Source of the DNA: Octopus sinensis
Taxonomy: Eukaryota
DNA: 64,000 nt
Assembly: GCF_006345805.1 (NCBI RefSeq)
Contig: NC_043009.1
Location: 57,226,001 to 57,290,000, forward strand
Direction: 5' to 3'
The position numbers and the translations under genes are program-made. Positions 2,217-23,400 of this stretch are shown piece by piece. How positions within the stretch are numbered: position 1 is the first letter of the stretch; every line of letters starts with the position of its first letter. Under the pieces are notes generated by a model. That model searched no databases. It worked only from the letters and a program-made list of their open reading frames with translations, and was not told the origin of the DNA.

Positions 2217-4974
2217 GTCCTAATCATGCCTGACAGCCATGATAAATGCCAAGAACTGTTGAAGAAGATCCAAGATGAGTGTAAAAGCAAAGGTCTTCCT
2301 GATTTTATGAAAAGGGAGTTCACCATGTTGCCAGCAACTACTGAGCAAAACAGTTCAAATATTCCCAAGATACGACTGCTGCAATGGAATGTTCTAGCAC
2401 AAGGTAAATAAAAATTCTCTATTAGCTTCTGTCTTATTTTGTTCTTTATTGAAATTACTCTTGCGCTCCATACTTTTTTTTAACTTAAATTAACCCTGTA
2501 TTATCTTGTAGTTTTGAGATTTCAAAGTTGTGATTGTATATTTTTAGAATGACATTGCAGTTAGAATGACAAGAGTTAAGTATACTTAAAATTAGATGGC
2601 CCGAACACATAAGCAATATGGAGCTATGGCAAAGAACAAATCAAGTTTCGATTAGGGAGAAAATATTTAAGAAAAAGTGGAAGTGGATTGGTAGCACAAT
2701 TAGAAAAGAAACACCAAATGTAGCGAAAAGTGCTTTACAGTGGAATCCTGATGGATATAGAAAGAAAGGTAGGCCTAAGAACTCGTGGCAAAGATCAACA
2801 CAAAAAAAAATTCAGAAGCTGGCTACCTGCATGGTTCTTGGTCTCAAGCATTTGCCTTATGAAGAAAGGCTGAAGACGCTCGACCTTTATTCTCTAGAAA
2901 AACGATGACGCCGTGGTGATCTCATTCTTGCTCACAACATCATAAGCGGAAAGTGTAACCTCTTAAAAGAGCTGTTCTTCACTCCTGCTCCAGAGCGTCG
3001 GCTGTAGGGTCACTCCGAAAAGCTCTATCTGCAATGATTTCATCTCAATCGAAGGAGAGGGGCTTTCTCCATCCGGGTTGCAGATCCGTGGAATAAGCTG
3101 CTGGACGAGATAGTGAAGATGCCGACGACCGCTCGGTTCAAAGTCTCTCTTGACCAGAAATGGCCTGAACTCTTTGCATGAACACCCTCCCTATACATAC
3201 TCCATGTCCCCCTACATAGCCTTGCTTTTTGCTTTTTGAGCCAAAAACTTAACTTAACTTAACTTAACTAAAAGGAACTAGAGAAAGGGGGACATTCATA
3301 GCAGAGTATAAGTACAGAAGCGAAAAATTATGCGACATGGAATTCTACTATAAGTGGCCTATACTTATATAAGTTGGAGGGTTAAAGGCAGGGAAAAAAA
3401 AATTAGCTTCTGTTTCTCTTTTGTGTGTCTGTTTCATTAGGCTGTAAGGACATCACTGCCAGCTTCTTTACAATAGTTTGATAATTTTAGGGTGGATGTT
3501 ATTGTTGTTTAGCCCCAGGTCAAAACCTGACCCAACACCTCTTTGATTGAAAGTGTTCCAGCTATGTTATTATTGCCTTCTCCACCCACCCCCAAGACTA
3601 CTGTATCCTGGTTTTTAGAATAGAAGCATTATATCCCTGTGTATTGTAAGACATAACCAAAAGGGTCTCTCTCTCTCTCTCTCTCTCCTGTACTTTCCTT
3701 CTTGTTGCCACAACAGCTAATCTAAACAATATTCTTTTCTATTCTAGGCGCAAGGCCTGAAATTTGGGGGAAGGAGCTAGATGATTAGATTGACCCTAGT
3801 ATGCAACTGGTACTTAATTTATCGACCCTGAAAGGATGAAAGGCAAAGTTGACCTTGGCAGAATTTGAAACTCAAAACGTAAAGACAGATAAAATGCCGC
3901 TAAGCATTTCACCCAGTGTGCTAACATTTCTGCCAGCTCACCACCTTACTAATATAAACAGTATTGTTAGCCTGGCGTACTAACAGAGAGCTTATAAAGT
4001 ATTTTACCTGGATTAATAATGACTCTGTTTTATGTATATATAGATAGACAGACAGGGATATAGACTCGGACAGATAGCTAAGAAAGATTGAGTTGTTTTT
4101 ACTGTTACATAATTCTGTAATCACGTTATTTTTCTCTCTTTCAGCATTGTCAGTAGGAACAGACAATTTCATCCTGTGTCCTATGAGTGCACTTTCTTGG
4201 GATACAAGAAAACTTCGCATCCTTGAAGGTATTCTAAACAACAATCCAGATGTTATCTGTTTAGAAGAAGTCGATCACTACGACTATTTATCCTCACATT
4301 TGACATCTGTTGGGTATTCTGGTATTTTTCAGCCTAAACCAGATTCTCCTTGTCTGTATTTAAGCAACTCTATGGGACCTGATGGTTGTGCCTTATTTTA
4401 CCGAAAAGATTACTTAAAACTGTTGGATTTCCAGAAAATTGGTCTTAAAAGGAAAGATGGGCAGCTGATGAACCAAGTAGCCATTCACTGCTTGTTGAAG
4501 ATTATTTCTGGTGCTGAAGAAGGCAAAGACAAATTCTCTGTAATTGTCACTCATTTGAAAGCAAAAGAAGGCTTTGAGAAACTACGTTACGAAGAGGGTA
4601 ATTTCATCTTGGAGTATATCCATGAGAACGCCAAATCATGGCCAGTTATTGTCTGTGGAGACTTCAATGCAGATCCCATGGAGGAAGTCTACAAATCTTT
4701 CTCAAAGAATGATCTTCAACTGTTTAGTGCCTACACAAAATTGTCAGACGAAGGCAGTGAACCATCATACACAACGTGGAAAGTGCGTGATTCTCCGACA
4801 GGACCAGTAGAAATTTGTCGGACAATTGACTACATATGGTGCAGTCAGAAGTCTTTAGAAATTCTTTCATTGCTCGATCTCCCCAAAGACGAAGATGTTG
4901 GACAAAACCGTCTGCCTTCACATTCCTACCCATCTGATCATCTTTCTTTAGTTTGTGACTTCCAATTGATCTAA
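2217..4974 (+). CDS. NOCT: Nocturnin (EEP-family NADP(H) 2'-phosphatase, CCR4-like); two coding exons seen, any upstream exon not identified
   Basis: Exons 2217-2403 (ctgcag| ... CAAG|gtaaat) and 4145-4974 (ttcag|CA ... TAA) join in phase 1 to give RLLQWNVLAQ-ALSVGTDNFILCP...PDVICLEEVDHY...VTHLKA...VIVCGDFNADP...TIDYIW...YPSDHLSL, the nocturnin/EEP motifs. In-frame ATG at 2226. Confidence 0.95.
2600..3395 (+). mobile_element. RTE-like LINE 3' fragment interrupted by a CR1-like LINE 3' fragment (about 2810-3270) with an (AACTT)n tail
   Basis: KWKWIGSTIRK...ALQWNPDGYRKKGRPKNSWQRS resumes after 3270 as KELEKGGHS*QSISTEAKNYATW (RTE C-terminus). The insert reads LKHLPYEERLKTLDLYSLEKR*RRGDLI...FSIRVADPWNKL (CR1 C-terminus). 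Confidence 0.8.
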
Positions 4975-9243: not shown

Positions 9244-12200
9244 TCATGATATATGCGAAGCAGGAGTTGTGGGCGATGGTGACATCTGGGGAAAGGACGA
9301 AGTTACACTGGGGTTCTGCTGGATAAGTTCTCTGTGGCAGGAATAGCTGTGAGGGCTGATTTGAATTGGAATATGGTGTATCAGTGTTGGGTCCATCACT
9401 TGGAACACAAGCTGTTAAGTAAAGAAAAATAATTGATTTATTAATTAATAAACAATTAATTATAGCAAAACATTTTCTTTAGCCTGATATAAAATCAACC
9501 AACAAGAACTATAGTTAAAGAAGGGTCTCAAGACAAATATAAATGTTGAGGGCTTATTATCAAACCCTAGGTCTGCCTGGATTGAGCTGAACTATAGTTA
9601 GAGTCTACGTTACTCCTTAGGGGCTCATAGGGCCAGTTTTCTGGTTTCCCAGGTGTAGGTATTCCTTCCTGGAAGGGGATGCCAGTCTGTCATAGGATTA
9701 CTCATTCTTACCAGCTGAGTGGACTGGTGTGATGTGAAATGAAGAGTTTTGCTCAAGAACACAATGGATCACCCAGTCTAGGAATTGAAACAACAATCTT
9801 ACAATCGTGAATCCCAAACCCTAACCACTGGGCCATGTGCCTCCATGACCTGAACTATGATAAACAGCAATTCAGCCATGTACATCCAATCTTTTATTCA
9901 GGTATAGTGTATGCCTATGACTACAACAACCAGTATGTCCTTCTCTGTTTAAGATAGTAGTGTGTGCCTTGAAAGAGATTTGGCTGTTATTTCTAGCACA
10001 AGTTTCTTGCATTAGCTGGTAATATTGGGTGGTAGGTCTGACACATTACTCAATTTAGCACCTCCACTTAGACTTGCATGACTGTAGCGGGAAGGATTGA
10101 AGGTAAAATTAGAATTTTAACTTAAATGTTAGATCAGTGGTTCTCAACCAAGGGTCCATATGGCCCTTGTGGATCCATATAAGATTTTGTTGTTAAGGTT
10201 TATGTGCAATAAATTAATTAAACTTCTACAATACAGAAAACAATTTTTATACAATTCCTAACAAAAATATTATCAGGAATTATAATTCTAAAAATATAAT
10301 TATAAATATATAATATAGTTCTAAAAATATATTATTGTGTCTGGGGAGAGTCATTCTCTTTTAGTGCTTTATTCTATAACACACTCATTGGTTTGATTTC
10401 CACTCATTTACTTAATTATTTATTTATTTATTCTTAAAATTTCTGTTGCATCTTGCATCTTCTCAATAGTTGTTGACTCTGTCCGTTATCCGAGCTGTGT
10501 TCTTTTTGTTTGTTTGTGCGCATATGTGTGGGTGTGTGTGTGAGTCAGTGACTACTGAAAAGGTTGCAAGACGCAATGAAAATTTTAGAAAAAATAAATA
10601 AGTAGAGTGGAAATTGAACTGGTGAGTGTATTAAATAACAAGGCACTAAAAAAGAATGACTCTCCCCCAGACACAATAAAATATGCTTCAACACACAAAT
10701 TCACATAAAGAATCTTGCAAACCAAATCCCAAAACGATCTAAAAATATAATTATAAAAGATGATGGTAATATTACTACAATTCTAAAAATATAATTATAA
10801 ATCATCATCATCATCATCATCATTTAGTGTCCGTTTTCCATGCTAGCATGGGTTGGACGGTTCAACTGGGGTCTGTGAAGCCGGAAGGCTGCATCAGGCC
10901 CAGTCAGATCTGGCAGTATTTCTATGGCTGGATGCCCTTCCTAACGCCAACCACTCCGTGAGTGTAGTGGGTGCTTTTTACGTGCCACCCGCACAGGTGC
11001 CAGACGGAGCTGGCAAACGGCCACGAACGGATGGTGCTTAATATATAATATAATTCTAAAAAAATGGTGCTTGGTGACAGGAAGAGCATTCGACTGCAGA
11101 AAATCTGCATCAACAAATTCTGTCCAAGAAGTGGACGATAAAGCAGTGATGATGATGGTGATGATTTCTGACACTACACCATTGTATTGTAATGTTTAAT
11201 ATACTCTGTTTCACTACTTATGGTTCATCATATGCATGCACACATGGACATCTATGCCCAAAGAATGGAGACCCTAAGGCAGCGAGCTGGCAGAAACGTT
11301 AGCACGCCGGGTGAAATGATTAGCGGTATTTCGTCTGCGTTACGTTGTGAGTTCGAATTCCGCCGAGGTCGACTTTGCCTTTCATCCTTTCGGGGTCGAT
11401 AAATTAAGTACCAGTTATGCACTGGGGGTCGATGTAATCGACTTAATACCTATGTCTGTCCTTGTTTGTCCCCTCTGTGTTTAGCCCCTTGTGGGTAATA
11501 AAGAAATAAGTATTTCATCTGTCTTTATGTTCTGAGTTCAAATTCTGCCAAGGTCGACTTTGCCTTTCATCCTTTTGGGGTCGATAAATTAAGTACCAGT
11601 TACGCACTAGGGTCGATGTAATCGACTTAATCCCTTTGTCCTTGTTTATCCCCTCTATGTTTAGCCCCTTTTGGGCAATAAAGAAATAAGACTGGAGACC
11701 CTTACCTCAATGTAGGGATAAAAAGCTGACTGGTCTGTGATTTTGAAATAAGACTCTGTATCAAACAGTAGCTTATACACTGTTGTCTTAACGATTTTTT
11801 GTCCAGCAAGGAATGCAACATGACCATCAATGCTACTGGCACTGTAATTAAAGAAATACAAACATGTCAAAAAACAATCAGAACCATCACTACCGCACTG
11901 ATCCTTTCTTCTAAAACATGATAAGCCATGTGGTTCCTCAACAAGAAATCTGTTCTGCTTTGGCCCTCTTCTTTTATACTTCAATCCAGCACTGGATTAA
12001 CCTTTAACCCTTTAGTATTTGCATTATTCTATCAAAAGTAATGCTTATTTATTCACATTCTTTTAAATTAATCCTGCATTATCTTGTAGCTTTGAGATTT
12101 TGATGAAGTAACTGTTAATTTTTAGAATTACATAGTAGGGCTGGTGTGAGAGGCCAGATCTGGCCAATTTGAACATAAAACAGGGGAGAATATTTTGGCT

Positions 12201-13735
12201 GGATATGGTCGGTTTAAATGCTAAAGGGTTAAGCAAAATAATCATGTGCTTAGGGAATCAAGGAAAGGAGGGCACCACAGAAAGGGTTAATGGTTTATTG
12301 TACAAAAGAAATAACTCTAACCTTACTAAAATAATATTCCAAGTGATTTATATGATTGAAATATAATTTTGAAGTGTTCATGGTGTCATAGAGAGGATCT
12401 GATCAAAGTAGGAGAAAACTTGTTAAATATAAATAAAGTGGAAGAAAACAAAAATAAACGTTATTTTCAATCTGTTAGTTTTGTTTCATTTTGAAAAATA
12501 AAAATATATTTTATGGTTTATTATTGTTTATATTCTGAATTACATATATATGGTGGGCACCAAAATCTTTTAAGTGCTCAGGACCTCTGTGGATCTTGAT
12601 CTGATCCTACTTGAAACACTCCTTTCCTAGTATAAAACCACCTCTCTTGGGGACCATAGTATTGCAAACTGCCTTGTGACCCCTCTAGTGCTTGTGGTAT
12701 GAAAAACACACCTAATACACACCAAAATGGCTGGTGTTAGGAAGGGGATCCAGGCATAGAAACCATGCCATAGTAGAAAGTGTAACACACGCAGTTCTTG
12801 AACCCATCGGATCCTGTCAGTGTCCAACCCATGCCAGCATAGAACAAGGACGTGAAAAGATAATGATGATGATGTAACTTATTGATATTAACTGATATTT
12901 AAGGAGAGTGTTGTTATTGAGGGAACAGAGTAGAGATACAGTTGACAGAAACAACTTGTATTGTATAACAGCCCTTTTTCTTTTATTCAGGCCCCAACTT
13001 CATCTTTTTTCCTTCTTCACAGAATGAAGGGTTAAAGTAGGAAAAAGTTGAAGTGAGGAAGTATAGTCTAAACTATCCCCTTGTAGTTTAGACTATGAGC
13101 ATCATAATCATCATCATATTATCTTAACCACTGCTATATTTTTTTGCCTATTCTACATACTTGTGGGTTAAGATGGTTGGCATCTCTTACTGACACAAGT
13201 ACAATGTCTTTGTAAAAGAGAACAATTTTTTTTAACCATTTCAATTCTGAGCAATTAGGGAAGAACATGAGGTGAAGTTACAGTGTTTAGCTTTCAGTTT
13301 ATTTGACTTAATTCAATTCAAAAGCAAAGTCTAGACATGTATGGACTAGCAAAGACCAGTTCAGACTAAGCCAGACAAATATGAACCAGTCCAGACTAAT
13401 CTAGACCGGTACGAATCAGTCCAAACTAAACTAAACTGGAACGGACCGGTCCAAACCAAACTAGTTCTGAGTAGATCAAACCAGTATGAACCAGTCAAAA
13501 CTCAAACTAAACAAAACAATGAGTATTTTTTTTTTTACTTAGAATGTTCAACTCTTTTTTTGTTTTGTTTTGTTTTTCAGAAACTGCACTTCAGTGTTAA
13601 ACAAGTTTCTTACCTTTTCTGAAGCAGTTTCCAAGATCGCTTCTCAATCTGAATAAATAATAAGACAGGTACACCAGTTGCAGGCAGACCTTTGGAAATA
13701 TCAAATACATGGCTAGAAATTGGTGAAGTTATTTC
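9244..13735 (-). CDS. Transthyretin-like / 5-hydroxyisourate hydrolase (URAH)-like domain, divergent; 3 exons with no start codon of their own
   Basis: Exons 13735-13614, 11841-11706 and 9411-9244 with canonical AG/GT and matching phases (2, 0). Translation: EITSPISSHVFDISKGLPATGVPVLLFIQIEKRSWKLLQKSASSIDGHVAFLAGQKIVKTTVYKLLFDTESYFKITDQSAFYPYIELVFQVMDPTLIHHIPIQISPHSYSCHRELIQQNPSVTSSFPQMSPSPTTPASHIS*. It aligns end to end with the HIUase pattern SPLSTHVL..G.PA...DGR...YK..F.T..Y...FYPYVEIVF....HYHVPLLLS..SYSTYRGS. Confidence 0.9.
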
Positions 13736-16700
13736 CTGCAAAATAATGTTGTTATGTAAGGGAATTAATGAGAATTGTAATGGGAGAAAAAAACAAAACA
13801 AAAGGAGATATATGAAGAACTGAGAGGGAAATGAACAAAAAGAGAGAGAGAGAGAAAAGGGGAGGAGGAAAGGATGGAGAGAGAGCAGAAAAACAAAGAG
13901 AGGGGTGAAAATTGAAGTCTAAAAGATAGAAAAAGAGAATTAAAAATGAAAGAAATGTCATTTATATTTCTTTTACATCCATTTTCCCCAATCTTTTTAT
14001 CCAATCTGAATTGGTTACAACGGGTATTTTTATAACCATTCTTTGCTGGGATAATTGGATACGACAACCTAAAACACATTCGACCATGAAATAGCAGTGG
14101 AGCCTGTTTAGGTTTGGTTTGCTATCAAGGTGAAACAGAGTTATCTACCTTGCTCAGGGATATAACACAAGCTGTCGTACAGTTTCATATACCTATTTCT
14201 TTACTACCCACAAGGGACTAAACACAGAAGGGACAAACAAGGACAGACAAACGGATCAAGTCGATTATATCGACCACAGTGCGTAACTGGTACTTAATTT
14301 ATCGACCCCGAAAGGATGAAAGGCAAAGTCGACCTCGGCGGAATTTGAACTCAGAACGTAGTGGCAGACGACATACTGCTAAGTATTTCGCCCGGCGTGC
14401 TAACGTTTCTACCAGCTCCATCGTCATCGCATCAATATCATAATCATATCCACTTTTCCACGCTTGCGTGAGCTGGAAGGAATTTGGTGAGGCAGATGCC
14501 CTTCCTGTTGCCAGCTTTCACTTGTTTCCAAGCAAGATTAAATTTCCCCATGGCCAGACATATTTTCACAGAAGACTAGACACGAAATAACAGTGACACG
14601 TGTGTACAGTTATTGAGCAATGTCAAAACACACACACACATACAACAGGCTTCTTTCAGTTTCCATCTACCAATCCACTCACAATATATCAACATCGTTT
14701 TCACGTCCACTCTTTCATGCTTGCATGGATTGGACAAATTTTTTCAAGGTAGATTTCTATGACCAGATTCCATTCTTGTTACCAATCCTCATCCGTTTCC
14801 AAGTAAGATAATATTTCCTCAAGTCTGCCGAGCACAATCAGCACGAGCGCCAGACATGATTTCATTAAAGGTTGCAAAGGAATTACACTACTTGTATCGA
14901 TATTATGAGAATAATTTCCTCTCTTCTATCCATTTGCTCACCCCTAAATTGTCTCCAGACAAGGGACCAGGCCTGAATATTTGCAACAAAGTAGATTATA
15001 TGAATGGCACCCAAGGACCAAGTAGTGGTGTTAAACCAGGGGTTACAGACAGGAGCGGGCATAACTGTTTACCAGGCCCCTTTGAATGTGTTAACATATA
15101 GAGTGCAGGCCCCTCAGGCAGTGCCCGATTGACCGACTGCTCAGTCCAGCCCTGGTTTCAGATGAAATTTACCAGCCAAGAACAAGGAATGTTTCTTATC
15201 ACAGACTTGCACAGTTTTTGTCCAGTAAATTTCAACCATGGGGTCTTGCTTTACCTATAGTTATGGCAGAAGACAATTACTTATAGTGCCATACAATGAG
15301 ATTGAACCTGAAACCATGTAGTTCCAAGGCAAACTTCTCAACCACACCTACTGCCATTACCTCTATTTATCCCCCAGTTTCCCACCACCCCTGTACCTCT
15401 CACTTAATCCCTGTCACTGTGCATCTCTCTTGCATTCTACCTCTGCACATTTTGTATCATCTGTACTGCCACTTTTTACCCCTGCCTCCAACTGATATTT
15501 GACTGATCACACCTCTGCCCGTGTTCACCACTCACTGCATTCCTCTCTATCCCCATTTCTAACCATCTGCCACTCTCCTTTCACACTCACACAAACCTAC
15601 TTAGCTACCCATTTACCCTGTCCAATCCTCTGAATCACTCCTCTTACATTCGCTCTTCCAGTAACTTCTCTCTTTTCCAACTAAGGTAACCATGTATCTC
15701 CCCTGCATCAAGACACCTGATCCTGTCTTTCTATCATACTTTAACTTCTCATCACCTGGCATAAAGCCACCTGCTTCAATTACAACACCTCCCTCATTTG
15801 AAAGGCGGTCTCTTGCAAGTTCTTGGTGACCTTACTGGTACCAATGTCACGTAAAAAGCATCTACAACTCTCTGTAAATAGGTTGGCATTAGGAAGGGTA
15901 TCCAACCATAGAAACCATGTCAAAGCAGTCACTGGAGCATGGCACAGTCCTCTGGCTTGCTAAGTCCTGTCAAACTGTCCAGCGTATGCAAACATGAAAA
16001 AGTTATGTGCTGTGGAAGGATTCTGGTCCCCGCAAATAACTAAAAGGTGGACTGACTCATTGTTATAAAACAAAGAACTGTGTGCAATTAGCAGTTGGTG
16101 TTGGTAGCAGTTCATTGTGAGTCTCTGATATAGTGTTGAGTCTTGTGTAATAGTAATAGTAGTGTGGTGTCTAAATACTTTCTCCCTCCTGCTTCATAAA
16201 AAGCACCATTTGAGCATGGTCATTGCCACTGCCATCAGAGTGGTCCTATGCTGGTGGCACGTAAAAAGCACCATTCGAGCATGGTCGATGCCAGTGCCAC
16301 CTGACTGGCCTCGTGCTGGTGGCACATAAAATGCATTTACTATACTCTTGGAGTGGTTGGTGTTAGGAAGGGCATCAAACTGTAGAAACCTTACCAGATC
16401 ACATTGGAGCCTGGTGCAGCCTCCTGGCTTGCCAGTTCTCAGTCAAACTGTCCAACCCATGCCAGCATGCAATGCAGACATTAAACAATGATGATGATGA
16501 TGATGAATACAAGGATATAAAACTATGTTAAATGGTGACGACGATGATGATAGTGATGACAACCAGGCCTATCACAGATCTGCTGATATTAAAGGACCAA
16601 AGGAAAGCAAAGCGGAAGAGAACCAGAAGCACAAAAATGTTAGTATACCATATCTCGTGTCCCTCGTTTCTTTTTCTTTGTGTGGCCATCATTACAGTTG

Positions 16701-19700
16701 ATGATGTTGTTGTTATTATTGATATTGTTATTATTATTATTATTATGAATGTTGTTGTTGTGGTTAACCATGTTGCTGGTGTTGTGATTAAGTGGAGGGC
16801 TGAGTTCTTTTTTGCGTTTGGCTTTCAAGTTGTTAATGTCCCTCGTTGTTAACTGTTTGCCAGTCACATTGCATATATACTCTCGGATGTTCTTGGTCTT
16901 CATTCCAATGTCTATTAGCCGGTATGTCTCCGTGAGGACGTTGGGTGACAGAGACTGCCTGCGGTTCTCAGGGTACATGTGACCCAGCATCTGATGCGAG
17001 TGGTTTAAATTGATGGATCGTATCACCATTCTCTGCTTCTCTCGGTCAACTGATGCAGCAATTAGAGCAGGACATCCAGTTTTATATGTTCTGAAATTCA
17101 AAAGGGAAAACAGGTTATTATTATTATTATTATTATCATTATTATTATTAAGGCAGTGAGTTGGCAGAATTGTTATCATGCTGGACGAAAAGCTCAGTGG
17201 TATTTCACCCATAGCCACATTCTGGTTCAAATTCTGCTGAGGCTGACTTTGCCTTTCATCCTACATGATAAATTAAGTACCAGTGAAACACTGGGGTCAA
17301 TGTAATCAACTCGTCCCCTCCCCCAAAATTTCAGGCCTTGTGCCTTTAGTAGAAAGGATTATTATCATGTTGTTATTATCATTATTATTGTTATTCAGTA
17401 GTCTGTGATTATTGCAAATGAGTATTTCCAATATTCTCTGAAAACCGTCTGGCCATGGGGAAATATTACTTTTTTGGGGAAGTAGGTCGGAGTTGACAAG
17501 AACTATATAAAAAAATCAATAAAGTCTGTTCGACCCATACAAGCAGAGAAAAGAAGGTGTTAAAACGATGACGATTCATATTACACTTGCATGGAGTTGA
17601 GTGCAATGCAGTGGTTGAGAGAGGAAATCTCTTTTATGGTTTACTGTCTGAACTACTTTTGTAACTTGAGAAGTTTTCACTACGATTGTAGCAGTTGAGA
17701 GAATGAGTTGAATATGGTTCATATGCTGAGGTGGCGTTTTCTTAACAGTATAACTCAAACTCCAGATTGGAGACATGCAGTAACAATTAAGGTCGGATGG
17801 AAACTTTATACATGATAATTGGTTACAAATTTTGGCTCAAGTCCAGCAGTTTCGGGGAGGAGGCTAAGTTGGTTACATCGACCCCAGTACGCAACTGGTA
17901 TTTATTTTATCGACCTCGAAAGGATGAAAGACAAAATCGACCTCGGCGGAATTTTAACTCAGAATGTCCAGACGGTCGAAATGCTGCTAAGCATTTCGTC
18001 CGGCGTGTTGACGATTCTGCCAGCTCGCCGCCTTGTTTATATATGATAATTAAGATCCCTTTTTTTTTTTTTTTAACATTAAACACAAACTGAAGACAAG
18101 TGTGGTAACAGACCAGGTTTAGTGAAACGAGAGTTCACGTAACTAGTAGCCTTTCCTCACACAAAACCCAGGCTAAACATTAGGCGAGGATCAGGACGAA
18201 AATGAATGAAAGATTATCAAATATGCCGATCTTTCCAAACATTAACGCTAGAACGAAGAGAATGGTGATAACGCAACGTGAAACAAATCAAGCCAGAATC
18301 AACATACCTAGGATCAAACACATCTAGAACCATTCCGTCGCTCACATTATTTAGACATAGTGTGTACAGGACTACGTTATCGTACTTGTCCTCTTTTTTA
18401 AAATAATTCCATTTTGCCAACGTTTGTATTTACTATTTGATAACACAGATAACAATTAGTTTCTTTCAATTTACTGTTTCACTTCTGTATGTATGGTAGC
18501 TATCTGTTTACATACCTGCGTATCTATGTACTAATCATAAAGAATATCCACCAGTCTTTCTACACATATAGCAACATGTCAAAATGATAATAAATGTATC
18601 TGCCTATCTACATAACTATAGATTACACATACACACACAACAACAACACATAACTATCTACAACATTTGAAACGTATTCGTAGAAAATTTCATCAAAACA
18701 AATATCCATTTTTTTCAGAAAATTATTAGAAAACAGTGTTGGGTGTGAAGAACACACGTCTGTAATCACACACACACAGTATTGACAATAAAACCTTATA
18801 TTGACATCCATGCATCGTTTTAAGGGTAAAGTCAACAACGAGTGATTAACAAGTGAGAGAGAGAGAGATAGGGACAGAGAAAGAGAGACAACAACAGACA
18901 GATATAGATTGATCAAGAAGAAGAAAACACCACATGAGACATCTCCCACTAAAAAGAAAAAAAATCGTTTGAGTTGCAACTACATGATTCCAGGTTCGAT
19001 CCCACTGCAGGGTATTTTAGGCAAGTGTATTCTGTTTGATACAGCCTCCGGGTTCACCAACACCATCGAATGAAATTTGCTAAACGAAAACTGCGTCGGA
19101 ACCCATCGGAGGAACCGTTCTTGTTTTGTATGGAAGTGTGTGTGTGTGTTTATGTTTACGTTAGTCTAAAACCGGTGTTGCTTATGTTGTGTCGCTTTAT
19201 GTTCCGTAACTTAGCAATTCAACAATAGGGATTGATAGACGAAGTACAGAGGTCGATATGATAATTGAAACCAGTAAAAGAAAAGAATATAAAGAAATGG
19301 AGGAAATACTTTTGGTTGGGTCGTATGCCAGGCACAGTCCGTCGTCTCGAGTAACCAAACTGTTTACAAACATATTTGACGTATTTGTATTTGAACTTCT
19401 CGTCTAAAGGTTCGACTTTGACACATCGGGATCGGTTAGCTTTGGCAATTGTTTGACAGTCATGGATGGTGAACACAGCATTTGTCAGCTTGCAGACAGC
19501 TGCTATAGCAGAAGACAGGGCAGAAAAGTCTTCGAACTCGTCCCCAGCATTGAGTAAATCTCGACAGGCTTCGTTTGCCCCAATCTCAATCAGGGCTTTG
19601 CTCACAAGTAAATCCTCGCTGATTTTGTCCGAGCACTGCTCGTGTTGATGTTGTGGTTGATGGTGGTATTGCTGTTGTTGATGATGATGTTGGTATTGTT

Positions 19701-19917
19701 GCTGTTGCTGCTGTTGTTGTTGTTGTTGTTGCTCTTGTTCGAGTGTGGTTGTAGTCAGGACAGTGGCCGCCAGAACGTCAGCGGCCGAGGTGGATGACAG
19801 TTGCTGTTGTGGTATGACCACCAGTTCGGTGACTGCTGTTGGAGTTGCAGTCGACTGTTCGGTGGTGAGAAGGCTTACACTCTCAGCCACTACATCTTGC
19901 TCACCTGTCGTTGCCAT
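9244..19917 (-). CDS. Predicted 5-exon, 491-aa fusion gene: ZSWIM3/FAR1-like DNA-binding domain + HIUase/transthyretin-like domain
   Basis: Exons 19917-19310, 17090-16649, 13735-13614, 11841-11706 and 9411-9244 total 1476 nt with an open frame. The link uses ATG|gtatac (phase 0) to ttttgcag|GAA (phase 0). The donor is weak and has no transcript support here. Confidence 0.65.
10800..11040 (-). mobile_element. Abundant retroposon 3'-end family with (GAT)n tail (GGAAGGGCATCC core); other copies at about 570-810, 16200-16505, 30140-30420, 37230-37545, 48790-49030, 49480-49850, 53480-53715 and 57592-57752
   Basis: Near-identical CCACTACACTC..GGTTGGCGTTAGGAAGGGCATCCAGCTGTAGAAAC...CCAACCCATGCCAGCATGGAAAACGGACGTTAAACGATGATGAT blocks recur many times. 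Confidence 0.85.
11275..11690 (+). mobile_element. Tandem copies of a second SINE family (GGCAGCGAGCTGGCAGAA head); other copies at about 14200-14420(-), 33610-33830(-), 43130-43500, 51860-52230(-) and 58660-58875
   Basis: Repeated TGAGTTCAAATTCCGCCGAGGTCGACTTTGCCTTTCATCCTTTCGGGGTCGATAAATTAAGTACCAG core. Confidence 0.85.
13325..13515. repeat. Degenerate tandem repeat (CCAGTCCAGACTAA-like units) in an intron of the HIUase-like module
   Basis: Recurring accagt(c/t)ca(g/a)actaa motifs about every 30 bp. Confidence 0.55.
16640..19917 (-). CDS. ZSWIM3-N/FAR1-like (MULE transposase-derived WRKY-GCM1 zinc) DNA-binding protein module with poly-Q and poly-N tracts; no DDE catalytic domain
   Basis: Exon 19917-19310 (ATG ... 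CAA AA|gtattt) joins exon starting at 17090 (tttcag|A) in phase 2, giving GDEFEDF...YKYVKYVCKQFG...RPNQK-TYKTGCPA...LNHSH...YPENRR...LTTRDINNLK. This has the C..C..HxH ligand set. The exon reads to TAA at 16640 unless spliced at 16649. Confidence 0.85.
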
Positions 19918-20096: not shown

Positions 20097-21146
20097 TCCG
20101 TTTACAGCGCAACGTAACCGGGTCATTTCATCCTCGTTGTTTATTTTCTCCTTTTCTTCGTAAATTATTTTATTTGTTTGTAAGTTTTTATAAATTACTT
20201 TTCTTTTTGCTTCTAAATTGGTTTGTTTAAGAATTTTGTTTGTAAATTTTATTTAATCAGTGTGTGTGTGTGTATTATGTTTATAGATGTTGGTTCGAGT
20301 CGCACGGACGGCCTTCAATTTTTTTCTATCCAAAAGGACTTTTGACGCAATATTTACACTATTGTTTATAGTTTTATGTGATTTGAGAGCCACCATTCCC
20401 AATGATAATTAAAATAAATTACTCATGAAATTAACAAATTAATTCTACTTAACATGTTTGAAATTAATAAAATTAATTAATCGAAATCAGCATTTAATTT
20501 TTTTAAATTAATAAATCGAATTCATATCAGTAGGGAGAAAATACCTACGGTGTATAAAGTGTATATGAATTTATATTTACGCAAAAGGCTTACCTAGGCT
20601 AATAACTTGAATAACAAGACGTGCGTGTGTGTCGTACTTATTCATGTACTGGTGAAGACTGCTTGGCTGACGAAATCTAAAAAAGACTGAAACACGTCTA
20701 GAGTTGTCGCCTTTCTGCTCAAATCACCATTTCGTTGCCCATATTCTATACTAGCTGAAACAACCGGAGTTACCTGAGTTAATGACTTAGGGAATTAACA
20801 GTAACATCACAAAGCTCTTTATTTGACTTATCTTTTCGAAAAAGAAAAAAAAAACACTCGGCGAAATTTCGGACTAAAAACACTTTGTACACCTTTTTCT
20901 TTATCTTTTAAGAATATATTTTTGTTTCATATATAAATTCCAAACATTTGTTGGTTCAATTCTGTAAAAATTTGTCCTCAAATTCAAATTTTTTTAATCC
21001 CTTTTCAGTTTCTGCTTAAACGTAATTCTTACTCTAACTCAAAATTGTAATCCTATGTGCTCACACGAAACCCTAACATTGAATGCTAACCTTCAGCGGA
21101 ACGAGAATGAGTGTGATATGAAAGATGTATGTGTGTGTGTGAAGAG

Positions 21147-21779: not shown

Positions 21780-23400
21780 CACGGTTCTGCCTGATCTTGT
21801 GATTCTTTTGAAGGCTGGCGTGGAGCACTTCTCATGCGTCTGGCCATTATTTTGTGCTTCTGCATTTTATCAGGAGAAGCATTTGTGATTTCTTTCCTTG
21901 AGTCAAGTTGAGTAACATGTTCTATGGAGTTTGTAGGGTCTGTAACTTGTTTCCTGGAGTTTGTAGGGTCTGTTGGATGGTTGTCTGTCTCTATATTGTT
22001 GGGCGATCTGGCAGGCATTTCCATCTGAGTGGTCTGTTTATACTATCTGTCTGTGCCTATGCTAGTATCTCTCAGTTCCTTTTGTTTCTCCGCAAATCTC
22101 CATGTGTTGTTTTCACACTGAAAGACCTCGGTTCTTTACATTGTCTTGCTTTTTCTCCAGGTATTCAACGTTTGTTGCTTTTTGTCAAGGACCCGTACAG
22201 CTTGTCCTTTGTGCGACGGAGGTATTTCCATCTTTGCGTACTAATCATATGTAGTTTTCATTTGTATTTTCAATTCTTCAAGACGTTTTCTCTGTCTTTG
22301 AGTTACATGAGAATAGCTCCAGCATAATGGCACAAGTGTTGTGATCGGTCTGCTCAACAGGATCTCGACGGGCGGCGGCATCTTTGAGTTTAATGGTGTG
22401 GCTCTTAGATTCAAAAATGCATTGTTTATGTCTTCTTTGCTTTGTTCACATTTTTGGATTGTCTTTTTAATTGTTTGTACCTGTCTCTCTATGAATTCGT
22501 TTGATTGGGGTATCTTGGTGATGTTGAATTCCCCATTTCTGTGTGAATTGTCGATATGGTTTTCGTGTATATTGAGGACCATTGTCGCTAAAAATTTCAT
22601 CATGTCTGACGAAGAGAGACACAGTCTTTTTGAATTCCTCTGCGAGATTTCGGGTTGATGAATGTGGCATTTGTCCGAGTTGAATACCAATCCAGATTCC
22701 TTTGCTTTTTTCATGAGTCTTTGTAGATTTCTTTCATGCTCTTCTTCGTCTTTGCCATGGACAGTGATGTCATCAGTTATTCCAGCAACCCTTGAGAGTT
22801 CTTCAATGATTTCGTCCATTCTAGCTTGAAAGATATTTTGAGATACCTTTAGACCAAATGGCAATCTAGTCCAACAATATCTTCCAAATGGGGTCCTGAA
22901 GCTTGTGAGTAGCTGACTTTCTTCATCCAGATGAACAGATCGCTGAAAGTGCTAGAACCAGCAAACTGAGGGTTCAAGCTCTTCCACCGATGGAATTTTG
23001 TGGGGGCATCTTTTCAATGCTTGATTAAGTTTTTGTGGGTCGATGCAGATGCGAAGTGATCCATCTTTTTTTTATGGAATATGCCATGCTTGAACACCAA
23101 TCTGTATATTGTTTCACAGGCTTGATGACACCCGCCCCTATTTCTTCCATCTTCTGGAGTTCAATCTTGGGCTTATGTTTCAGGTGAACTGAGCATTTCC
23201 GAGGTGGTTCAAAGAAGGGTTCCAAACATGCTTTTATGTATAATTATGCGGGTTCTTTGAAGCTGCCCAGGCTGTCGAAAAGATTTCGGTATGTTTCTTT
23301 CAAGCCTTCGATTGTTCTGAAATCAGAGTTGAATCCGTGACATGATCACAACGTATTGCGATTAATTTCATTGTCTTACATGCTGGTAATCCGATTAATT
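21780..23400 (-). mobile_element. Decayed Ty3/Gypsy pol fragment (RT joined to integrase core, internally deleted)
   Basis: RT motifs LRICIDP, WTRLPFGLKVSQNIFQARMD and GITDDITV; integrase motifs IFSDNGPQY, PQSN..IER.VQTIK and LNLRATPL. Frameshifts are present. Confidence 0.9.

What the first reader, a model, noticed from the sequence alone, without database searches (positions are those of the whole stretch)
9244..13735. HIUase/transthyretin-like domain with a rewired, histidine-rich pocket and loss of the YRGS signature
Known: HIUases use a conserved His (THVL), Arg (DGR), His (HYHVP) and C-terminal Tyr-Arg-Gly-Ser; loss of these features marks the switch to hormone-binding transthyretin in vertebrates. 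Seen: both His are kept (SSHVF, IHHIP), but DGR is DGH, TYRGS is CHREL, and 26 extra Ser/Pro/Gln-rich residues follow. The frame is intact across three exons. Inference: probably not an active HIUase, but an independent invertebrate neofunctionalisation. Four His plus a Cys per subunit at the tetramer channel suggest metal, pH or small-ligand binding.
Basis: partly seen in the sequence, partly recalled or inferred. Interest (0 to 1): 0.8.

Follow-up and report, generated by a model that had tools for sequence, protein, structure and literature searches.

The report
Zinc-finger protein with disabled HIUase domain
The altered urate-pathway (HIUase/transthyretin) domain is real and strongly conserved, but it is the tail end of a larger cephalopod-only gene that joins it to a transposon-derived zinc-finger domain, so it most likely serves a putative DNA-binding protein as an assembly or sensing module rather than working as an enzyme.

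Summary
Three minus-strand exons (13735..13614, 11841..11706, 9411..9244) encode a transthyretin/HIUase-fold domain (Pfam E=3e-24) with SSHVF, DGH, IHHIP, SCHREL and a 26-residue tail.

Exons 1-2 (19917..19310, 17090..16649) encode a Gln/His-rich N-terminus, a ZSWIM3_N/FAR1-like zinc finger (C..C..HxH) and basic clusters.

The fusion is found in Octopus bimaculoides, O. vulgaris, Argonauta hians and Sepia pharaonis. A spliced Sepia transcript carries all five exons.

Intron positions and phases in the domain match a canonical bivalve HIUase gene. So the peroxisome-targeting first exon was replaced by the zinc-finger exons.

The derived residues (Arg->His, Tyr->His, Gly-Ser->Glu-Leu plus extension) are invariant across octopods and cuttlefish. 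dN/dS is about 0.04-0.06, so this is not a pseudogene.

Most likely it is a nuclear DNA-binding protein that uses a catalytically disabled TTR-fold domain for tetramerisation, and possibly metal or ligand sensing. That function is inferred, not shown.

The gene is in databases as an uncharacterised prediction. I found no paper describing it.

The parts
19310..19917 (-). Coding exon 1 (608 nt, aa 1-203). Holds the start ATG at 19917, a Thr/Gln/His-rich low-complexity N-terminus (aa 1-95), a conserved helical stretch, and the first half of the ZSWIM3_N/FAR1-like zinc finger including Cys184 (19368..19366). Donor GTATTT.
   Evidence: ORF; tblastn to orthologs; splice model; Pfam ZSWIM3_N; orthologs start MATT.
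16649..17090 (-). Coding exon 2 (442 nt, aa 204-350). Holds the second half of the zinc finger: Cys209 at 17074..17072 and His233-x-His235 at 17002..16994. It also holds a confidently modelled three-helix segment, the basic cluster KAKRKKEL (16825..16802), an Asn-rich linker and a second basic cluster KKKKRG (16678..16661). Acceptor TTTCAG; donor ATG|GTATAC in phase 0.
   Evidence: The junction RGTRDM|EITSP is identical in the O. vulgaris and O. bimaculoides proteins.
13614..13735 (-). Coding exon 3 (122 nt). This is the first exon of the TTR/HIUase-like domain. It starts at acceptor TTGCAG in phase 0 with no Met. It holds SSHVF with the retained catalytic-type His359 (13711..13709). Donor GTAAGA, phase 2.
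   Evidence: The bivalve HIUase gene has an intron at the same position and phase.
11706..11841 (-). Coding exon 4 (136 nt). Holds DGH, with His398 at 11822..11820 replacing the invariant Arg, and the FYPYIE strand. The O. vulgaris gene models skip this exon, which gives a frameshift and the ending 'SLCSK*'.
9244..9411 (-). Coding exon 5 (168 nt including the stop). Holds IHHIP (His448-His449, 9378..9373), Gln453, SPHSYS, CHREL (9339..9325, replacing TYRGS), and then a 26-aa Ser/Pro/Gln-rich tail modelled as disordered (9324..9247), followed by TGA.
   Evidence: A candidate AATAAA/ATTAAA signal lies 92 nt downstream, at about 9151.

Best explanation
The region is the 3' part of a cephalopod-specific fusion gene (491 aa, five coding exons, minus strand 19917..9244).

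Origin (shown by gene structure). An ancestral metazoan HIUase gene lost its first exon, which encodes the PTS2 peroxisomal signal. In its place it acquired, by phase-0 to phase-0 splicing, two exons of an upstream transposase-derived gene. Those exons encode a Gln/His-rich N-terminus, a ZSWIM3_N/FAR1-type zinc finger and basic, NLS-like clusters.

Changes to the TTR-fold domain (shown). It was altered at sites that are near-invariant in HIUases: L->F361, R->H398, Y->H448, L->Q453, T->C461, Y->H462, G->E464, and the terminal Ser was replaced by Leu plus a 26-residue tail. It has since been held almost unchanged across octopods and cuttlefish.

Function (inferred).
- The protein is nuclear and binds DNA through the zinc finger.
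- The TTR-fold domain no longer hydrolyses 5-hydroxyisourate.
- It provides the homotetramer scaffold typical of the fold, bringing four DNA-binding domains together.
- Its polar, His-lined inter-subunit pocket (His359, His398, His449, Gln453, His462, Glu464) may bind a metal ion or a small polar ligand that modulates the protein.
For: Architecture and reality of the fusion:
- A representative search finds the domain only at the C-terminus of larger proteins in cephalopods.
- The five-exon model has canonical splice sites and gives 491 aa.
- The same exon structure is present in Argonauta, O. bimaculoides and S. pharaonis.
- A 2264-nt contig with UTRs carries the uninterrupted 422-aa ORF. It aligns to the S. 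pharaonis genome in five exon blocks.

N-terminal domain:
- Pfam ZSWIM3_N scores 52.9 bits (cut-off 27.8).
- DUF5575_N scores 41.1 bits (cut-off 24.1).
- FAR1 scores 25.8 bits, E=1.8e-5, just under its cut-off.
- The ligands Cys184, Cys209 and His233-x-His235 are conserved.

Origin:
- The Mya arenaria HIUase gene has exons of 63/119/133/90 nt with intron phases 0, 2, 0. The introns sit at the same positions as around the cephalopod exons of 122/136/168 nt.
- The PTS2 consensus RLxxxxxH of metazoan HIUases is absent.

Loss of the canonical catalytic set:
- Derived residues are shown.
- TIGR02962 scores 84.6, below 87.45, while the bivalve enzyme scores 134.8.
- Published mutants show the YRGS Tyr is needed: Y108F kills the Salmonella dublin enzyme's activity, and Tyr->Thr abolishes it in the zebrafish and amphioxus enzymes (PMC4324301).

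Selection:
- NG86 dN/dS for the TTR core is 0.038, 0.063 and 0.039. For the zinc-finger region it is 0.03.
- The stem branch is long and the branches inside the clade are short.

Fold and interfaces:
- Fold intact.
- Interface motifs G-x-P-A and S-P kept.
- The canonical His pocket can bind zinc: PDB entry 2g2n is titled 'E. coli transthyretin-related protein with bound Zn'.
Against: - No direct evidence for DNA binding, nuclear localisation, tetramerisation or ligand/metal binding.
- The AF2 model of the N-terminal domain is poor (pLDDT 51) and its fold search found nothing significant. The zinc-finger assignment therefore rests on profile matches and the Cys/His pattern.
- Both catalytic-type His and the Arg of YRGS are retained, so a changed enzymatic activity is not excluded.
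- Copepod Brinker-DBD+HIUase fusions keep every catalytic residue. This shows that fusion to a DNA-binding domain does not by itself imply loss of catalysis.
- Invariance of the pocket residues is not beyond expectation.
- O. vulgaris gene models skip exon 4. If that reflects real transcripts, some product lacks most of the TTR domain.
Confidence: 0.55

Rival explanations
1. The domain is still an enzyme, tethered to a DNA-binding region. It would be either a weak HIUase or a hydrolase with a changed substrate or a metal-dependent mechanism that uses the new His cluster.
For: - His359, His449 and Arg463 are retained.
- Very strong purifying selection acts on the pocket.
- Copepod Brinker-DBD+HIUase proteins keep the full catalytic set, so DBD-enzyme fusions of this fold exist.
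- The score is only just below the TIGR02962 cut-off.
Against: - Arg->His at a site that is 224/224 Arg.
- Tyr->His at the position where Y108F or Y->T abolishes activity in three tested enzymes (PMC4324301).
- The terminal Gly-Ser is replaced and extended, so there is no free C-terminal Ser at the site.
- There is no PTS2, so the protein would not be delivered to the peroxisome, which is where most metazoan HIUases are predicted to go.
Confidence: 0.15
2. The TTR-fold domain is only an oligomerisation module with no ligand. The pocket substitutions simply removed an unwanted activity and are now conserved for structural reasons.
For: - The fold and interface motifs are conserved.
- Conservation of the pocket residues is no stronger than that of the rest of the core: 73% of core positions are invariant.
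- The domain sits at the C-terminus after a long flexible Asn-rich linker, as expected of a clustering module.
Against: - Replacing hydrophobic or neutral channel residues with His, Gln and Glu (L->Q453, Y->H462, G->E464) is not what simple inactivation requires.
- The same derived residues are fixed across octopods and cuttlefish, although dS between them is saturated.
Confidence: 0.25
3. One reading: a stand-alone three-exon degenerate HIUase paralog that acts as a soluble metal or ligand binder, like an invertebrate transthyretin.
For: - The three exons are in frame and encode a complete TTR fold.
- As in TTR, the YRGS Tyr is lost and the C-terminus is extended.
Against: - The exon at 13735 begins at an acceptor and has no Met.
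- The Sepia transcript and three complete gene models (O. bimaculoides, Argonauta, S. pharaonis) join it to the zinc-finger exons. The two O. vulgaris models do the same but skip exon 4.
- There is no signal peptide and no PTS2.
- Ile363, equivalent to zebrafish Ile16 and to TTR Ala19, is not changed, so the second channel-opening TTR substitution is missing.
Confidence: 0.04
4. A decaying pseudogene or an annotation chimera of two neighbouring genes.
For: - O. vulgaris models skip exon 4 and end prematurely. One of them (P0052) is chimeric with a retroelement fragment.
- Other HIUase gene models in databases are merged with cadherin or transposon pieces.
Against: - dN/dS is 0.04-0.06 over the TTR core.
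- Reading frames and splice sites are intact in five genomes.
- Exon 4 is intact in O. vulgaris.
- The spliced Sepia mRNA carries all five exons.
Confidence: 0.01

Closest known systems
5-hydroxyisourate hydrolase (HIUase, EC 3.5.2.17; Pfam PF00576, NCBIfam TIGR02962), for example zebrafish 2H1X and the bivalve enzymes
   Same: - Same fold (TM 0.91-0.93).
- About 30-40% identity.
- Same intron positions and phases as a bivalve HIUase gene.
- Retains the two catalytic-type His, the Arg of YRGS, and the G-x-P-A, FYP and S-P motifs.
   Different: - Arg->His, Tyr->His, Thr->Cys, Gly-Ser->Glu-Leu plus a 26-aa tail, and L->F and L->Q in the pocket.
- Below the equivalog cut-off.
- No PTS2.
- Fused behind a 350-aa zinc-finger region.
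Vertebrate transthyretin (the thyroid-hormone distributor that evolved from HIUase)
   Same: A parallel route: loss of the YRGS Tyr, loss of the active-site Arg, a C-terminal extension, and the tetramer fold kept.
   Different: - Independent origin: a separate clade that is not within vertebrates.
- Different replacement residues: His/His/Glu here, where TTR has Glu54/Thr119/Val121 (TTR numbering from my own knowledge).
- Ile at the Ala19-equivalent position is retained.
- Not secreted; it is part of a putative DNA-binding protein.
FAR1/FHY3 and ZSWIM1/3-type proteins (transcription factors or domesticated proteins derived from Mutator-like transposases, with a WRKY-GCM1-type zinc finger)
   Same: The N-terminal domain matches ZSWIM3_N and DUF5575_N above their cut-offs and FAR1 just below its cut-off. 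It has the C..C..HxH ligand pattern.
   Different: No MULE transposase core and no SWIM zinc finger was detected. The C-terminal partner is a TTR-fold domain instead. That FAR1/FHY3 are transposase-derived transcription factors is stated in PMC13306707 (abstract).
Other multi-domain HIUase proteins: plant TTL (OHCU decarboxylase + HIUase), copepod Brinker-DBD+HIUase, and Hymenoptera CxxC..H..H-motif+HIUase proteins
   Same: The HIUase/TTR domain is at the C-terminus behind another module. In the copepod and Hymenoptera proteins the partner looks like a DNA-binding domain. Some Hymenoptera proteins also degrade DGR and extend YRGS.
   Different: The partner domains differ. Plant TTL pairs two enzymes of one pathway (PMC2834698 abstract). 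The copepod proteins keep the full catalytic set. None of them has ZSWIM3_N.

Membership tests
HIUase/transthyretin superfamily (Pfam PF00576 fold) | Significant profile match and the beta-sandwich TTR fold | tested here: met
   PF00576 E=2.9e-24, 86 bits against a cut-off of 25. AF2 core pLDDT about 95. Foldseek target-normalised TM 0.91-0.93 to 2H1X, 7KCN and TTR.
Functional 5-hydroxyisourate hydrolase | Score above the NCBIfam TIGR02962 equivalog cut-off | tested here: not met
   84.6 bits against a cut-off of 87.45. The Mya arenaria HIUase scores 134.8.
Functional 5-hydroxyisourate hydrolase | N-terminal catalytic His (T-H-V-L) and second catalytic His (Y-H-V-P) | tested here: met
   His359 and His449 are kept in all cephalopod orthologs. 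The corresponding canonical sites are His in 223/224 and 224/224 sequences.
Functional 5-hydroxyisourate hydrolase | Active-site Arg of D-G-R | tested here: not met
   His398 in all orthologs, against Arg in 224/224 canonical sequences.
Functional 5-hydroxyisourate hydrolase | C-terminal Y-R-G-S with Ser as the last residue | tested here: not met
   H-R-E-L followed by 21-26 more residues in all orthologs. Tyr mutants are inactive in published work (PMC4324301).
Functional 5-hydroxyisourate hydrolase | Peroxisomal targeting (PTS2 in exon 1 of metazoan genes) | tested here: not met
   The RLxxxxxH consensus is present in metazoan HIUases and absent here, because that exon is replaced by the zinc-finger exons. 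The C-termini (HIS, GAH, RLS) are not conserved and are not SKL-like.
Functional 5-hydroxyisourate hydrolase | HIU hydrolysis activity; homotetramer | not testable with these tools
   Needs an enzyme assay and SEC-MALS or multimer modelling. Only monomer prediction was available.
Vertebrate transthyretin | Descent from the vertebrate TTR duplication; secretory signal peptide; the channel-opening pair of substitutions (Ile16->Ala and Tyr116->Thr in zebrafish HIUase numbering) | tested here: not met
   The cephalopods form a separate clade with 100% bootstrap. There is no N-terminal signal peptide; the domain is internal. Ile363 is retained and Tyr is replaced by His, not Thr.
ZSWIM3_N / FAR1-type (WRKY-GCM1-like) zinc-finger domain | Profile match above the curated cut-off | tested here: met
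   ZSWIM3_N 52.9 bits (cut-off 27.8) and DUF5575_N 41.1 bits (cut-off 24.1). The same families are precomputed for the orthologs.
ZSWIM3_N / FAR1-type (WRKY-GCM1-like) zinc-finger domain | Match to the FAR1 DNA-binding domain PF03101 and the C..C..HxH zinc ligands | tested here: inconclusive
   FAR1 scores 25.8 bits, E=1.8e-5, below its cut-off of 28.1. Cys184, Cys209 and His233-x-His235 are present and conserved. The AF2 model is too poor to check the fold (pLDDT 51).
Full FAR1/FHY3 or ZSWIM1/3 protein | MULE transposase-like core and a C-terminal SWIM zinc finger | tested here: not met
   No such Pfam matches anywhere in the 491-aa protein, even at E<=1.

The most novel reading that the evidence does not exclude
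The protein is a cephalopod-specific transcription regulator that is gated by a ligand or a metal. A former urate-pathway enzyme has become the tetrameric sensor domain of a transposase-derived DNA-binding protein. It is one of at least three independent animal inventions of a 'DNA-binding domain + TTR fold' architecture (cephalopods, calanoid copepods, Hymenoptera). If so, the TTR fold is a recurrent and so far unrecognised regulatory module of transcription factors.
Probability: 0.25. Interest if true: 0.8.

Novelty: new variant of a known kind. Interest (0 to 1): 0.6.

Why it matters
The HIUase-to-transthyretin transition is a textbook case of an enzyme turning into a binding protein, and it is known from vertebrates. 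This would be a second, independent exit from HIUase catalysis. It changes the same key sites (active-site Arg, YRGS Tyr, C-terminal extension) but with a different outcome: the domain is recruited into a putative nuclear zinc-finger protein by exon replacement.

It offers a natural experiment on which features of the TTR fold are reusable, such as the tetramer scaffold and the inter-subunit pocket. It is also a clean example of a lineage-specific gene built from a transposon-derived DNA-binding domain and a metabolic enzyme, in a clade known for lineage-specific regulatory novelty.

The look-alike fusions in copepods and Hymenoptera suggest that the theme may be general.

Tried and rejected
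- **Word-indexed homolog search with the 141-aa domain:** found nothing. The exhaustive representative search was needed.
- **Hand search for an upstream Met exon in 13736..16640:** only weak candidates in the wrong phase. Orthologs showed the true upstream exons instead.
- **tblastn of the domain against the whole window:** no second TTR/HIUase copy in these 64 kb.
- **Canonical cephalopod HIUase paralog:** a profile of nine metazoan HIUases returned 7995 hits. The best 120 include many bivalves, a brachiopod, annelids, echinoderms, crustaceans and fish, but no cephalopod and no gastropod. This is inconclusive because only 120 were listed.
- **AF2 of the N-terminal domain with a 4-sequence alignment:** failed (pLDDT 51). 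Its Foldseek search gave nothing below E=0.5. Only non-significant 45-50-residue overlaps with transposase-type HTH domains appeared. I treat these as a lead, not evidence.
- **PDB sequence and profile searches with the N-terminal domain:** no hit.
- **Pfam on the three-helix segment alone:** no hit.
- **Literature searches** for cephalopod HIUase, transthyretin-like + octopus, urate oxidase + octopus, HIUase + zinc finger, and ZSWIM3 N-terminal domain: nothing relevant.
- **Pocket-residue invariance as a test for ligand binding:** not informative.
- **Structure job whose first row began in exon 2 (GTRDM...):** It was rerun with the 141-aa version.
- **Locus look-ups:** no gene with exactly the product P0005 or P0048 is on record.


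Full report
**1.

The finding lies on the minus strand. Three ORF pieces (13735..13614, 11841..11706, 9411..9244) are each bounded by canonical AG acceptors and GT donors. They join in frame to 141 residues.
- Pfam assigns residues 6-113 to PF00576 (HIUase/Transthyretin) at E=2.9e-24.
- The best solved-structure sequence matches are a reconstructed HIUase-TTR ancestor and zebrafish HIUase.
- An AlphaFold2 model built on 22 sequences has pLDDT about 95 through residue 117 and a disordered tail.
- The model superposes on HIUase and TTR crystal structures with target-normalised TM 0.91-0.93 and rmsd 1.4-1.6 A.

In an alignment with 224 canonical HIUases, the Arg of DGR is 224/224, the Leu of HVL 223/224 and the Thr before YRGS 223/224. 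The YRGS columns are invariant by construction of that set. The cephalopod sequence differs at each of these sites.

**2.

The exon at 13735 begins at an acceptor (ttttgcag|GAA) in phase 0 and has no start codon. An exhaustive HMMER search of 1.8 billion representatives found only four close relatives. In all four the domain sits at the C-terminal end of a longer protein.

Cluster look-ups and a second search identify the orthologs:

| Species | Accession | Length | Source's name |
|---|---|---|---|
| Octopus bimaculoides | XP_014779890.1 | 480 aa | 'putative protein DDB_G0292252' |
| Octopus vulgaris | CAI9732081.1 / CAI9732080.1 | 394 / 442 aa | 'Hypothetical predicted protein' / 'DDB_G0292252' |
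| Argonauta hians | GAB1601753.1 | 555 aa | 'hypothetical protein Ahia01_000453700' |
| Acanthosepion (Sepia) pharaonis | CAE1234312.1 | 397 aa | 'uraH' |
| unnamed (Logan assemblies) | - | up to 422 aa | - |

Guided by these, the window yields a five-exon model: 19917..19310, 17090..16649, 13735..13614, 11841..11706, 9411..9244. All splice sites are canonical and the product is 491 aa. The exon 2/3 junction RGTRDM|EITSP uses the donor ATG|GTATAC at 16649 and is reproduced in the Octopus proteins.

The window is 93-96% identical in DNA to the O. vulgaris assembly. It therefore comes from a close relative of that species.

**3. The fusion is transcribed and old**

A 2264-nt Logan contig (run ERR12374249) carries an uninterrupted 422-aa ORF with 5' and 3' untranslated sequence. 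It aligns at 94-99% identity to the S. pharaonis genomic locus in five blocks spread over about 25 kb. The blocks correspond exactly to the five exons. It is therefore a spliced mRNA that joins the zinc-finger exons to all three TTR exons and ends in CHREL plus tail.

The same five-exon structure, with TTR exons of 122, 136 and 153-168 nt, is present in Argonauta, O. bimaculoides and S. pharaonis. The fusion therefore predates the split of octopods and decapodiforms.

**4. How it arose**

A canonical bivalve HIUase gene (Mya arenaria) has four coding exons of 63, 119, 133 and 90 nt with intron phases 0, 2, 0.
- Its first exon encodes the PTS2-like N-terminus.
- Its three introns fall at the same alignment positions and phases as the introns before, within and after the cephalopod TTR exons.

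The simplest reading is that the first exon of an ancestral HIUase gene was replaced, phase 0 to phase 0, by the two coding exons of an upstream gene.

In an NJ tree the cephalopod domains form a 100%-supported clade inside metazoan HIUases. The clade sits on the longest internal branch (0.29) and has short branches within it. Its exact sister group is unresolved.

**5. The N-terminal half**

Pfam places residues 123-235 in ZSWIM3_N (52.9 bits, cut-off 27.8) and DUF5575_N (41.1 bits, cut-off 24.1). The FAR1 DNA-binding domain scores just below its threshold (25.8 bits, E=1.8e-5).

The sequence shows the C..C..HxH pattern: KYVC184KQFG, TGC209PALI, NH233SH235Q. It is conserved in every ortholog that covers the region. 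That pattern is the zinc-ligand arrangement of FAR1/WRKY-GCM1-type fingers; this point is from my own knowledge.

The finger is flanked by several other elements:
- upstream, a Thr/Gln/His-rich low-complexity stretch that evolves fast;
- downstream, a confidently modelled three-helix segment;
- an invariant basic cluster NNLKAKRKKEL;
- an Asn-rich linker of variable length;
- a second basic cluster, KKKKRG.

No transposase core and no SWIM finger is present. Structure prediction of this half failed with only four near-identical sequences (pLDDT 51), and the fold search was uninformative. DNA binding and nuclear localisation are therefore inferences.

**6. State of the TTR-fold domain**

Retained:
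- both catalytic-type His (His359, His449);
- the Arg of YRGS (Arg463);
- the G-x-P-A, FYP and S-P motifs that shape the fold and its interfaces.

Derived and fixed in all cephalopods: F361 (Leu), S393 (Thr), H398 (Arg), H448 (Tyr), I452 and Q453 (Leu-Leu), C461 (Thr), H462 (Tyr), E464 (Gly), and L465 plus a tail in place of the terminal Ser.

The first His of the canonical H-x-H is lost and variable. So 'histidine-rich' means four rather than three pocket-facing His. The core holds 6-7 His against a median of 4.

Other evidence against HIUase function:
- The domain scores 84.6 bits on the NCBIfam HIUase equivalog model, under the 87.45 cut-off. The bivalve enzyme scores 134.8.
- A review of the family reports that H6A, H95A and Y108F abolish activity in the Salmonella dublin enzyme. 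It also reports that Tyr->Thr at the YRGS Tyr abolishes HIUase activity and permits thyroxine binding in the zebrafish and amphioxus enzymes, together with Ile16->Ala in zebrafish (PMC4324301).
- The cephalopod domain has lost that Tyr and keeps the Ile (Ile363).

By mapping onto TTR numbering (my inference), the channel-lining set becomes His359, His398, His449, Gln453, Ser460, His462 and Glu464. That is a polar, titratable pocket. A PDB entry of the E. coli homolog with bound Zn (2g2n) shows that even the canonical pocket can take a metal.

**7. Selection**

Nei-Gojobori dN/dS values:

| Region | Comparison | dN/dS |
|---|---|---|
| TTR core | vs O. bimaculoides (dS 0.10) | 0.038 |
| TTR core | vs Argonauta | 0.063 |
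| TTR core | vs Sepia (dS saturated) | 0.039 |
| Zinc-finger region | - | about 0.03 |
| Low-complexity N-terminus and C-terminal tail | vs Argonauta (Sepia similar where defined) | 0.26-0.37 |

The gene is under strong constraint, so the pseudogene reading is excluded. Of 112 core positions, 82 are invariant among four orthologs. All seven pocket positions are invariant, but chance alone gives about 0.11, so this cannot separate 'sensor' from 'scaffold'.

**8. Most likely mechanism**

- **Shown:** the architecture, its origin by exon replacement, its transcription, its age, its constraint, and the loss of several defining HIUase features, including peroxisomal targeting.
- **Inferred:** the protein is a nuclear DNA-binding factor. 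The TTR-fold domain supplies the homotetramer typical of the fold and so clusters four zinc-finger domains. Its rewired pocket may bind a metal or a small polar ligand.

Rivals:
- A retained or altered enzymatic activity. The copepod fusions keep the catalytic set.
- A pure oligomerisation role.
- A stand-alone paralog. This is contradicted.
- A pseudogene or annotation chimera. This is contradicted.

**9. Comparison with the known, and novelty**

It is a member of the HIUase/TTR superfamily by fold. It is not a member of the functional HIUase family by four tested criteria, and it is not a transthyretin. Its N-terminal domain belongs to the ZSWIM3_N/FAR1-like group, but the protein is not a FAR1/ZSWIM-type protein as a whole.

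The gene exists in public databases only as automatic predictions. Its names range from 'DDB_G0292252' to 'uraH'; the latter would be misleading. Full-text searches found no paper that describes it.

I rate it a new variant of a known kind. It is an independent, TTR-like exit from HIUase catalysis combined with a domain architecture that I did not find described.

**10. A parallel seen in passing**

Among the other long hits:
- Calanoid copepod transcripts combine a Brinker DNA-binding domain with a fully canonical HIUase.
- Several Hymenoptera proteins combine a conserved CxxC..H..H motif with an HIUase domain. In some, DGR and YRGS are degraded or extended: ADGM/YRDILR, TAGK/YRGMDS, and STYVID in place of STHVLD.

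If these are real, DNA-binding-domain + TTR-fold fusions arose repeatedly in animals.

Noticed in passing
proteins P0015 (copepods) and P0103, P0104, P0109, P0113, P0137, P0018 (Hymenoptera and unnamed); not in the window: Other animals have long proteins with a C-terminal HIUase/TTR domain behind a likely DNA-binding N-terminus. Calanoid copepods have a Brinker DBD (PF09607, E=5e-14) plus a canonical YRGS HIUase. Hymenoptera (Copidosoma, Athalia, Diachasmimorpha, Polistes) have a conserved 'AYCxxCxKxLHAHRLSLLKHxCTxKH' motif plus an HIUase domain; in several of them DGR is degraded and YRGS is extended. This may be recurrent evolution of the same architecture.
   Followed up: partly
window 11706..11841 (exon 4); L006 (O. 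vulgaris OX597826.1) 14454..14606: Both O. vulgaris gene models (CAI9732081.1, CAI9732080.1) skip exon 4. That shifts the frame in exon 5 and ends the protein at 'SLCSK*'. Exon 4 is intact and encodes the identical peptide in that genome. This is either real alternative splicing that removes most of the TTR domain, or an annotation error.
   Followed up: partly
window 22241..22864 (-) and 20794..20902 (-): A reverse-transcriptase fragment (RVT_1, E=1e-12) lies upstream of the gene. The O. vulgaris model P0052 takes its N-terminus from this retroelement remnant, so that model looks chimeric.
   Followed up: partly
L002 (S. pharaonis) 13823..13936: The S. pharaonis protein named 'uraH' lacks 38 residues of the zinc finger, including the HxH. 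The annotation places an intron inside exon 2, but the transcript L003 is contiguous across it. The name 'uraH' also implies an enzyme function that the sequence does not support.
   Followed up: yes
window 11276..11690, 14189..14418, 17150..17311, 17865..18034, 33593..33831, 43151..43501, 51864..52228, 58149..58827 and others: A SINE-like repeat of about 240 bp occurs in 15 full or partial copies (74-90% identical) on both strands. Several copies lie in the introns of this gene, and two are in tandem in intron 4.
   Followed up: partly
window 4093..4974 (+): A long ORF of 293 aa matches the endonuclease/exonuclease/phosphatase family (PF03372, E=1.6e-20). It is probably the large last exon of a CCR4/nocturnin-type deadenylase gene, lying beyond the 3' end of the fusion gene and on the opposite strand.
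   Followed up: no
window 34800..35078 (+) and 63337..63630 (-); L004 1..960 (-): There are exon-sized ORFs with an RRM_1 match and with the start of a DnaJ domain. In O. bimaculoides an RRM_1 gene lies head-to-head upstream of the fusion gene, so local synteny seems conserved.
   Followed up: no
window 19690..19735 (-), aa 62-76: The poly-Gln run in exon 1 differs in length between the window, O. vulgaris and O. bimaculoides, and the Asn-rich linker is greatly expanded in Argonauta. The low-complexity tracts evolve by length change while the two folded domains are nearly frozen.
   Followed up: partly
proteins P0003, P0093 (JGI metagenome contigs of 1.2-1.4 kb): These proteins carry two tandem TTR/HIUase domains joined by a Pro-rich linker. 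The first domain ends YKGS or YQGS instead of YRGS, and the source organism is unknown. They were the best non-cephalopod hits to the query domain.
   Followed up: no
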